A stretch of DNA of 63,344 nt, counting the filler, from Octopus bimaculoides (taxonomy: Eukaryota), in assembly GCF_001194135.2 (NCBI RefSeq). It is 8 parts of 7 records of this genome, joined end to end, with 100 filler letters (N's around TTAATTAATTAA, not from the genome) between each part and the next. Parts side by side here need not be neighbours in the genome. Positions count along the whole stretch, not along the records: positions 1 to 17,411 come from NC_068983.1; 7 more parts are not named here. One strand, 5' to 3'. Positions 8,582-8,675 of the stretch are shown here, piece by piece. The position numbers and the translations under genes are program-made. The notes below the pieces were generated by a model, which saw only the letters and a list, made by a program, of their open reading frames with translations, was not told the origin of the DNA and did no database searches. Each line of letters starts with the position of its first letter. Position 1 is the stretch's first letter.

Positions 8582-8675
8582 CAGACTTCTTAGAGAAACC
8601 TAGCTTATTCAGGCTAAGATAATCGAGTCTCTGGTTATTTGAGCCTGAATGAGTTAGGATTTTGTAAGAAGCCTG
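8582..8675 (+). ncRNA. Candidate pri-/pre-miRNA hairpin (family not recognised)
   Basis: 8599-8615 pairs fully with 8642-8658 (17 bp, two G-U). After one mismatch there are 8 more pairs and an 8-nt loop, plus a basal stem CUUCUUA/UAAGAAG. The G-U pairs favour the plus strand. Confidence 0.55.

What the first reader, a model, noticed from the sequence alone, without database searches (positions are those of the whole stretch)
8582..8675. Textbook pri-miRNA-like hairpin with a miR-21-like candidate seed
Seen: about 26 bp of upper stem (17 bp + 1 mismatch + 8 bp), an 8-nt loop, a basal stem (CAG-CUUCUUA / UAAGAAG-CUG) and a CNNC motif (CUGC, 8673-8676) about 15-16 nt past the predicted 3' cut. 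The G-U pairs work only on the plus strand. It is not in any repeat I recognise in this window. The candidate 5p arm UAGCUUAUUCAGGCUAAGAUAA (8601-8622) begins with the same 8 nt as vertebrate miR-21-5p (UAGCUUAU); I know of no invertebrate miR-21, so this would be convergence. Known: coleoids have a large expansion of novel, neurally expressed miRNAs. Inference: this is a lineage-specific miRNA, possibly intronic in a plus-strand host transcript.
Basis: partly seen in the sequence, partly recalled or inferred. Interest (0 to 1): 0.75.

Follow-up and report, generated by a model that had tools for sequence, protein, structure and literature searches.

The report
Unproven microRNA-like hairpin in octopus DNA
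A very stable 110-base hairpin really is there, in repeat-rich non-coding octopus DNA, but everything testable fits an ordinary decaying inverted repeat as well as a microRNA gene, and the likeness to miR-21 depends on a guessed cut site.

Summary
The hairpin is real. On the + strand, 8582-8675 folds at -50 kcal/mol (z -9.9); the - strand gives -32.9. That is about 47 paired positions, not the roughly 35 bp of a canonical pri-miRNA, and the cited CNNC lies inside the paired stem. Rfam gives only sub-threshold generic hairpin hits (mir-580 34.8 bits against a cut-off of 83; mir-590 23.9) and no mir-21 hit. A neutral simulation of a perfect palindrome with 12 random substitutions reproduces the stability. 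It reaches the observed strand asymmetry in 6.7% of runs, so the G-U bias (7 G-U against 2 A-C) is only suggestive. A second, unrelated, near-perfect palindrome lies 3.8 kb away. The window shares its repeat families with Octopus bimaculoides. None of the candidate seeds appears among the seed sites in the held supplements of the main octopus miRNA study. No cephalopod genome or small-RNA data could be reached, so copy number, conservation and processing are untested. Best reading: a non-genic inverted repeat (about 0.5). A young lineage-specific miRNA remains possible (about 0.13).

The parts
8574..8683 (+). Full palindromic inverted repeat, a 110-nt hairpin. Of 52 stem positions, 40 are Watson-Crick, 7 G-U, 2 A-C and 3 transversion mismatches. 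There are no indels between the arms.
   Evidence: MFE is -56.6 on + (z -10.1) and -40.0 on - (z -7.2).
8568..8689 (+). Possible outermost limit of the repeat: GAC 8568-8570 pairs with GUC 8687-8689 across a 3x3 internal loop.
   Evidence: The self-BLAST alignment spans 8568-8689 at 76% identity over 123 nt. Pair probability is 0.99, but the 8560-8573/8684-8697 shell is no better than shuffles (49%).
8601..8622 (+). It is hypothetical and depends on an unverified Drosha cut at 8600|8601.
   Evidence: Sequence; pairing table. It shares AGCUUAUUCA with the Rfam mir-590 consensus, in a sub-threshold alignment.
8637..8658 (+). Matching candidate 3p arm, AUUUGAGCCUGAAUGAGUUAGG, which leaves 2-nt 3' overhangs against 8601-8622. 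It is hypothetical.
   Evidence: Pairing table. The 58-nt pre-miRNA-sized piece 8601-8658 folds at -29.2 kcal/mol (z -6.5).
8626..8631 (+). Terminal loop AGUCUC. It is 6 nt, or 8 nt if the G8625-U8632 pair opens. It contains no UGU or GUG.
8673..8676 (+). CNNC match (CUGC), at +15 from the proposed 3' cut. It lies inside the paired lower stem, not in a single-stranded flank.
   Evidence: pairs 8582-8675 and 8584-8673 at probability 0.99.

Best explanation
This is a short palindromic inverted repeat of 110-122 bp in repeat-rich, non-coding octopus DNA. It was most likely made by a local inverted duplication (fold-back or template switching during replication or repair; inferred). It has since accumulated about 12 substitutions with no insertions or deletions. 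It is not a dedicated microRNA gene. If the region is transcribed, the + strand RNA would form a double-stranded stem of about 47 paired positions. Such a stem could be a generic substrate for dsRNA-binding enzymes (ADAR, Dicer), but without a defined, selected small-RNA product. The hairpin, its extent, its mismatch pattern and its compatibility with neutral decay are shown. Its origin and its lack of processing are inferred.
For: The stem is about 47 paired positions over 52. Neutral simulation: a perfect 52-bp palindrome with 12 random substitutions gives a best-strand MFE of -54.6 +/- 5.0 against the observed -56.6, and 35% of runs are as good. A strand asymmetry of at least 16.6 kcal/mol occurs in 6.7% of runs. 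G-U against A-C is 7:2, one-sided p 0.09. A second palindrome of the same size class, unrelated in sequence and nearly perfect on both strands, lies at 12414-12538 (-76.4/-74.3, z -15), so this DNA does generate such repeats. The neighbourhood consists of SINE copies, a LINE reverse-transcriptase fragment, microsatellites and assembly gaps, with no recognisable exon. Rfam gives only sub-threshold hairpin matches, and the - strand scores nearly as well (mir-580: 34.8 on +, 25.1 on -, cut-off 83). The candidate seed sites are absent from Zolotarov et al. Data S3, and the 8-mer TCAAATAA is flagged there as non-seed. They are also absent from a Euprymna miRNA list.
Against: The mismatch pattern leans towards keeping the + strand RNA paired. 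Inside the pre-miRNA-sized part 8599-8658 there are 5 G-U and 0 A-C (two-sided p 0.06), and 7 of all 12 non-Watson-Crick positions are wobble pairs. The arms differ at about 23% of positions yet have no indel. No second copy was found in the window or in 62 kb of O. bimaculoides DNA.
Confidence: 0.5

Rival explanations
1. It is a young, lineage- or species-restricted microRNA gene. Drosha would cut near 8600|8601 and 8658|8659, treating the mismatches at 8581, 8585 and 8593 as an effective basal junction. Dicer would then release a duplex of about 22 nt. One arm would be loaded into Argonaute, possibly the 5p arm carrying the AGCUUAU seed shared with miR-21 and miR-590-5p.
For: The hairpin is strong and unbranched, with only 1x1 mismatches. 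The + strand is 16.6 kcal/mol more stable than the - strand, through 7 G-U pairs. The implied precursor is 58 nt with a possible 2-nt overhang. It is single copy in the 77 kb examined. Zolotarov et al. state that their octopus catalogue is an underestimate and leaves out species-specific loci.
Against: The stem is about 12 bp longer than the 35 +/- 1 bp optimum for Microprocessor (established knowledge, Fang and Bartel 2015). There is no UG at -14/-13 (it reads UU), no apical UGU or GUG, and no mismatched GHG. The CNNC is at +15 and base-paired. There is no Rfam family membership. The seeds are absent from the held octopus seed-site tables, which derive from 18 tissues. Hairpins this stable occur about once per 60 kb in sampled octopus DNA, implying 10^4-10^5 genome-wide against 162 annotated miRNA genes, so the prior is low. 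The strand bias is not statistically significant.
Confidence: 0.13
2. It is one copy of a dispersed miniature inverted-repeat element (MITE) or foldback element whose whole length is palindromic. Any small RNAs from it would be by-products of a repeat family.
For: Its size (110-122 bp) and its fully palindromic layout fit short MITEs. The genome region is dominated by mobile elements. Another short palindrome lies nearby. Rfam's sub-threshold matches include plant families built on long-stemmed hairpins (MIR2863, MIR2606, MIR476); that such plant families are often MITE-derived is my own recollection.
Against: No second copy was found in the window or in L003, about 77 kb in all. That sample excludes only extremely abundant families. 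No convincing target-site duplication flanks 8574/8683 or 8568/8689 (sequence). The two palindromes in the window are unrelated.
Confidence: 0.2
3. It is a structured double-stranded element inside a + strand host transcript, such as an intron or UTR. It would serve as an ADAR binding and editing site, or as another dsRNA-protein platform, rather than as a small-RNA source.
For: A near-continuous duplex of about 47 paired positions on the + strand only. The two A-C mismatches (A8581/C8676 and A8585/C8672) are of the kind ADAR prefers, and coleoids edit RNA heavily (established knowledge; this link is inference only).
Against: There is no evidence that the region is transcribed, and no exon is recognisable in the window. 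Any long hairpin would fit this idea equally well.
Confidence: 0.05

Closest known systems
Canonical animal pri-miRNA hairpins (Drosha/DGCR8 substrates), including the 90 novel octopus families of Zolotarov et al. 2022 (PMC9699675)
   Same: A single unbranched imperfect hairpin. A possible 58-nt precursor with 2-nt offsets, a 5' U on one arm, and G-U pairs that favour one strand.
   Different: The stem is about 47 paired positions rather than about 35. The flanks just below the would-be lower stem are paired, not single-stranded. UG, UGU and mGHG are absent and the CNNC is buried. There is no expression or conservation evidence. The seeds are not in the held seed-site tables.
miR-21 / miR-590-5p seed family (AGCUUAU), vertebrate
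   Same: With a cut at 8600|8601, the first 8 nt equal those of miR-21-5p (my own knowledge of the miR-21 sequence). Ten nt (AGCUUAUUCA) equal the Rfam mir-590 consensus in the same arm and register.
   Different: No mir-21 match appears at E<=10, and mir-590 scores 23.9 bits against a cut-off of 65. The resemblance ends after the seed and depends on an unverified cut site. With about 10 plausible registers over two arms and a few hundred known seeds, one 7-mer coincidence is expected in roughly 10-20% of hairpins (my estimate).
TE-derived palindromic miRNA precursors (for example the human mir-548 family from MADE1 MITEs, or plant MITE-derived MIR families)
   Same: A long, nearly perfect palindrome of about 110-125 nt, and sub-threshold Rfam matches to long-stemmed plant MIR families.
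   Different: No additional copies and no target-site duplication were found. Genome-wide copy number is untested.
Neighbouring palindrome at 12414-12538 in the same window
   Same: The same size class and the same kind of object: one stem with a small loop in repeat-rich DNA.
   Different: That one is nearly perfect and equally stable on both strands (-76.4/-74.3), so it is younger. Its sequence is unrelated.

Membership tests
Bona fide animal miRNA gene (Ambros 2003 / MirGeneDB criteria) | A hairpin with at least 16 paired positions between the two about 22-nt arms and no large internal loops | tested here: met
   21 of 22 positions of 8601-8622 pair with 8637-8658, and there are only 1x1 mismatches.
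Bona fide animal miRNA gene (Ambros 2003 / MirGeneDB criteria) | Reads from both arms with homogeneous 5' ends and 2-nt 3' overhangs (the Drosha and Dicer signatures) | not testable with these tools
   No small-RNA read data are available. Sequence strings were absent from the paper library and the held supplements.
Bona fide animal miRNA gene (Ambros 2003 / MirGeneDB criteria) | Conservation of the hairpin, with arms more conserved than the loop, in related species | not testable with these tools
   No cephalopod genomes are in the DNA collections. Searches with flank ORFs found nothing.
Canonical Microprocessor substrate | A stem of about 35 bp: about 11 bp of lower stem below the cut, then single-stranded flanks | tested here: not met
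Pairing continues to 8574/8683 at probability 0.85-0.99.
Canonical Microprocessor substrate | Sequence motifs: basal UG at -14/-13, apical UGU/GUG, a 3' flanking CNNC at +16 to +18, and a mismatched GHG | tested here: inconclusive
   -14/-13 reads UU, the loop AGUCUC lacks UGU and GUG, and -7..-5 reads AGA. Only a CNNC is present, at +15 and base-paired. These motifs are helpful rather than obligatory, and their weight in molluscs is not established.
MIR-21 family | Precursor homology detectable by the family's covariance model | tested here: not met
   No mir-21 match at E<=10 in the 181-nt or 141-nt searches.
Rfam mir-580 / mir-590 / mir-4427 | A score at or above the family's gathering threshold | tested here: not met
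   34.8 against 83, 23.9 against 65, and 23.2 against 86 bits. The - strand also scores 25.1 for mir-580.
Annotated octopus miRNAs (Zolotarov et al. 2022 / MirGeneDB Ovu, Obi) | The seed site is listed among the annotated miRNA seed 8-mers | tested here: inconclusive
   The 7-mers ATAAGCT, TAAGCTA, AATAAGC, AAGCTAG, GCTCAAA and GGCTCAA, and the 8-mers CTCAAATA, TCAAATAA and CAAATAAA, are absent from Data S3. TCAAATAA and CATAAGCT appear in Data S2 only as 'Non-seed kmer'. The files were truncated when stored and list only miRNAs with conserved targets. MirGeneDB itself was not available.
MITE / foldback transposable element | Multiple dispersed copies with terminal inverted repeats and target-site duplications | tested here: inconclusive
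   Inverted termini are present by construction. No second copy was found in 15 kb + 62 kb, and there is no clear target-site duplication. The sample is far too small to bound copy number usefully.

The most novel reading that the evidence does not exclude
The hairpin is a recently born, octopus-restricted microRNA that arose from an inverted duplication. Its 5p arm would have converged on the AGCUUAU seed of vertebrate miR-21 and miR-590-5p, adding one more locus to the coleoid miRNA expansion and catching a miRNA at an early, over-long-stem stage.
Probability: 0.1. Interest if true: 0.4.

Novelty: new member of a known kind. Interest (0 to 1): 0.2.

Why it matters
If it were a real miRNA, it would be one more lineage-specific entry next to the 90 novel octopus families already described, plus a curiosity of seed convergence with miR-21. 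That would be incremental. As an inverted repeat it is ordinary. Its use is as a calibration case. In this genome, hairpins with z-scores near -10 arise about once per tens of kilobases. A neutral model reproduces both their stability and, in about 7% of runs, a strong one-strand G-U bias. Structure alone should therefore not be used to call cephalopod miRNAs.

Tried and rejected
1. I searched 8 million papers for the arm sequences as RNA or DNA strings and got no hits.
2. I searched the supplements of Zolotarov et al. 2022 (Sci Adv and bioRxiv versions) for the arms and for seed-site k-mers and found none. Data S1 and S4, which probably hold the sequences, are not held.
3. The Euprymna scolopes miRNA list (PMC8125070 supplement) gave only a chance 10-mer in an unrelated loop. 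The mollusc small-RNA survey PMC12479628 has no held supplements.
4. Exact DNA scans of the metagenome, viral and prokaryote-genome collections for the arms were all empty, as expected, because these hold no cephalopod genomes.
5. I tried to reach orthologous contigs through spurious ORFs around the hairpin. Ten exact look-ups, a concatenated six-frame query and a full HMMER scan of 1.8 billion representatives with 12 flank ORFs found nothing.
6. For organism identification, the reverse-transcriptase fragment gave only unnamed Logan and ENA hits. Their accessions and the SINE sequence strings are not in the paper library. The SINE-derived ORF finally hit an O. bimaculoides protein.
7. I rejected homology to mir-580, mir-590 and mir-4427, because all are sub-threshold and partly strand-independent.
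8. I rejected the idea that the rod extends to about 195 nt, as the MFE of the 201-nt fold suggests, because the outer shells are no better than shuffles.
9. I rejected relatedness between the two palindromes, because the alignment score is below the shuffle mean.
10. There are no tRNA-like SINE heads near the hairpin.

Full report
OBSERVATION. On the + strand it folds into one unbranched hairpin at -50.0 kcal/mol. Two hundred dinucleotide-preserving shuffles average -19.7, giving z -9.9, and none folds as well. The - strand folds at -32.9 (z -6.5), because the G-U pairs become A-C mismatches. The pairing table confirms 17 bp, a 1x1 mismatch (A8616/G8641) and 8-9 more bp, closed by a 6-8 nt loop. 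It also confirms the CAG/CUG and CUUCUUA/UAAGAAG lower helices, the CUGC at 8673-8676, and the 22-mer UAGCUUAUUCAGGCUAAGAUAA at 8601-8622.

TRUE EXTENT. Self-BLAST aligns 8568-8689 with its own reverse complement at 76% identity over 123 nt, where G-U positions count as mismatches. In 201- and 301-nt contexts, AAGUUUU (8574-8580) pairs with GAAACUU (8677-8683) at probability 0.85-0.99, and GAC 8568-8570 pairs with GUC 8687-8689. The 8574-8584/8673-8683 shell is complementary beyond chance (1.2% of shuffles). Shells further out are not (49%, 8% and 31%). The object is therefore a 110-nt palindrome, 122 nt at most. The 8574-8683 piece folds at -56.6 on + (z -10.1) and -40.0 on -. A census of its 52 stem positions gives 40 Watson-Crick pairs, 7 G-U, 2 A-C and 3 transversion mismatches, with no insertion or deletion between the arms.

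SURROUNDINGS AND ORGANISM. The piece is a draft eukaryotic assembly with five runs of N. It is dense in TA/TG/GA microsatellites and interspersed repeats.
- SINE-like copies lie at 3893-4121, 4737-5149 and 12632-13077, with a 32-nt fragment at 8230-8261.
- Another repeat is at 7869-8051, with a copy at 11563-11744.
- A LINE reverse-transcriptase fragment is at 17100-17411 (Pfam RVT_1, E 4e-8).
- No exon-like ORF was recognisable, and there are no tRNA genes.
- The stretch 8262-9661, which holds the hairpin, is unique within the window apart from microsatellites.

A SINE-derived ORF matches 'uncharacterized protein LOC106868243 [Octopus bimaculoides]'. The 76-kb locus of that gene (GCA_001194135.2, CM046612.1; L003) shares 120 repeat alignments with the window, up to 94% identity over 399 nt. 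The window therefore comes from an octopus: O. bimaculoides or a close relative. The species itself is not proven.

TESTS OF THE miRNA READING. It would have 21 of 22 arm positions paired and 2-nt overhangs, which is miRNA-like. The lower stem, however, would be about 27 nt rather than about 13, and the whole stem about 47 paired positions rather than 35 +/- 1 (optimum per Fang and Bartel 2015, established knowledge). If Drosha measured from the real basal junction near 8574, it would cut near 8587, and the proposed seed would not exist.

The loop AGUCUC has no UGU or GUG. Positions -7 to -5 read AGA, so there is no mismatched GHG. The CNNC begins at +15 and is base-paired at probability 0.99, whereas SRSF3 binds it in single-stranded flank (established knowledge). 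With about 18% C, a CNNC within a 3-4 position window is expected in about 10% of cases (my estimate).

Arm choice: the 5' end of the 3p arm (A-U, U-A, U-G, U-A) is no more stable than that of the 5p arm (U-A, A-U, G-U, C-G). By the asymmetry rule the 3p arm is therefore at least as likely to be the guide.

Family membership: Rfam gives only sub-threshold matches. These are mir-580 at 34.8 bits (cut-off 83, with 25.1 on the - strand), MIR2863 at 25.1, mir-590 at 23.9 (cut-off 65) and mir-4427 at 23.2. There is no mir-21 match at E<=10. The mir-590 alignment shows the shared AGCUUAUUCA, so the likeness to the miR-21/miR-590 seed is real but confined to 8-10 nt. It also depends on the guessed cut.

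Literature: Zolotarov et al. 2022 annotated 164 (O. vulgaris) and 162 (O. bimaculoides) miRNA genes from 18 tissues. They required presence in both species and say the count is an underestimate. Their Data S3 lists seed-site 8-mers, the reverse complement of positions 2-8 plus A, in random row order. Sites for five 5p and 3p registers of this hairpin are absent from it. TCAAATAA and CATAAGCT occur in Data S2 only as 'Non-seed kmer'. The stored files are truncated, so this weighs against membership of the conserved annotated set without excluding it. A Euprymna miRNA list has no related entry.

NEUTRAL MODEL AND BASE RATE. I simulated a perfect 52-bp palindrome built from the 5' arm, with 12 random substitutions at a 2:1 ratio of transitions to transversions. 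The best-strand MFE is -54.6 +/- 5.0, and 35% of runs are at least as stable as the observed -56.6. A strand difference of at least 16.6 kcal/mol occurs in 6.7% of runs. G-U against A-C among transitions is 7:2 (one-sided p 0.09). Inside 8599-8658 it is 5:0 (two-sided p 0.06). Seven wobble pairs among 12 non-Watson-Crick positions gives p of 0.03-0.14 (two-sided), depending on the assumed share of transitions.

For the base rate, a 100-nt sliding fold of the window finds two non-microsatellite loci at or below -50. One is this hairpin. The other is an unrelated, nearly perfect palindrome at 12414-12538 (-76.4/-74.3 on the two strands, z -15 to -16). About 48 kb of non-N, non-simple sequence in L003 has none below -44.5. 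Leaving out the ascertained case, that is about one such hairpin per 60 kb. For a genome of about 2.7 Gb (size from my own knowledge) this implies 10^4-10^5 hairpins, against about 160 annotated miRNA genes. The prior for any one such hairpin is well under 1%.

COPY NUMBER AND CONSERVATION. There is no second copy in the window or in L003, where the best match is 31 nt at 84%, E 0.13. That excludes only an extremely abundant family. Every route to orthologous DNA failed, so conservation is untested.

MECHANISM AND RIVALS. The most likely reading (about 0.5) is a non-genic palindromic inverted repeat. It would have been produced by a fold-back or template-switch duplication (inferred) and would now be decaying by substitution. 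If transcribed, it would give a generic duplex of about 47 paired positions with no defined product. The rivals are:
- A copy of a dispersed MITE or foldback family (about 0.2).
- A young lineage-restricted miRNA (about 0.13). The mismatches at 8581, 8585 and 8593 would have to act as the effective basal junction.
- An ADAR or dsRNA-protein platform in a host transcript (about 0.05).
The remaining probability is unassigned.

COMPARISON AND VERDICT. The object resembles a pri-miRNA in being a single imperfect hairpin with plausible Dicer geometry. It fails the stem-length criterion and three of the four motif checks. It belongs to no Rfam family and is not in the accessible octopus seed tables. 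It resembles TE-derived palindromic precursors in shape, but no further copies were found. The hairpin is real. The miRNA interpretation cannot be decided with these tools and the testable evidence leans against it. The miR-21 likeness is a register-dependent coincidence. Interest is low (0.2) unless small-RNA reads show precise processing.

Noticed in passing
window 12414-12538: A near-perfect 125-nt palindrome, equally stable on both strands (-76.4 and -74.3 kcal/mol, z about -15 to -16). It is unrelated in sequence to the finding's hairpin and lies directly upstream of a SINE copy. Rfam gives it sub-threshold hits to plant MIR families (MIR7504 50.6 bits, MIR1120 43.4). It is probably a young inverted duplication or a MITE.
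   Followed up: partly
window 3893-4121, 4737-4965, 4921-5149, 12632-12860, 12849-13077; fragment 8230-8261: There are multiple copies of an abundant SINE-like repeat. An ORF read through it matches O. bimaculoides protein LOC106868243, and the copies match the O. bimaculoides locus L003 at up to 94% identity. This identifies the window as octopus DNA.
   Followed up: yes
window 17100-17411 (+); also 15507-15707 (-) and 16186-16452 (-): A LINE reverse-transcriptase fragment (Pfam RVT_1, E 4e-8) is cut off by the end of the piece. Two further ORFs look like retroelement C-terminal remnants but have no Pfam hit. The closest relatives are unnamed Logan (SRR11869391) and ENA contigs at 66-73% amino-acid identity. 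The Logan contig also carries the SINE tail.
   Followed up: partly
window 1-480, 5200-5330, 7250-7350, 8740-8860, 14320-14400, 15140-16100, 16960-17100: TA/TG/TATG microsatellite arrays give many sub-threshold Rfam hits to mir-297, mir-466, mir-3149, mir-1277 and others (best 71.8 bits against a cut-off of 90). These are low-complexity artefacts, not miRNA genes.
   Followed up: yes
window 747-983, 6198-6629, 9662-9990, 10963-11123, 13389-14304: These are assembly gaps (runs of N), 12% of the piece. The '99% complementary' inverted repeats I1-I6 (6198-6661 against 13357-13820) reported by the repeat finder are N-against-N artefacts.
   Followed up: yes
window 7869-8051 and 11563-11744; 10009-10148 and 11360-11499; 6694-6832 and 7130-7268: These are further interspersed repeat families: direct copies at 83% and 89% identity and an inverted pair at 84%. 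They have not been classified.
   Followed up: no
window 3340-3450 (+): A G/U-rich stretch folds at -44.4 on the + strand only. Its z-score is just -3.4 (the - strand gives z +0.6), so the stability comes from composition rather than from a real inverted repeat.
   Followed up: yes
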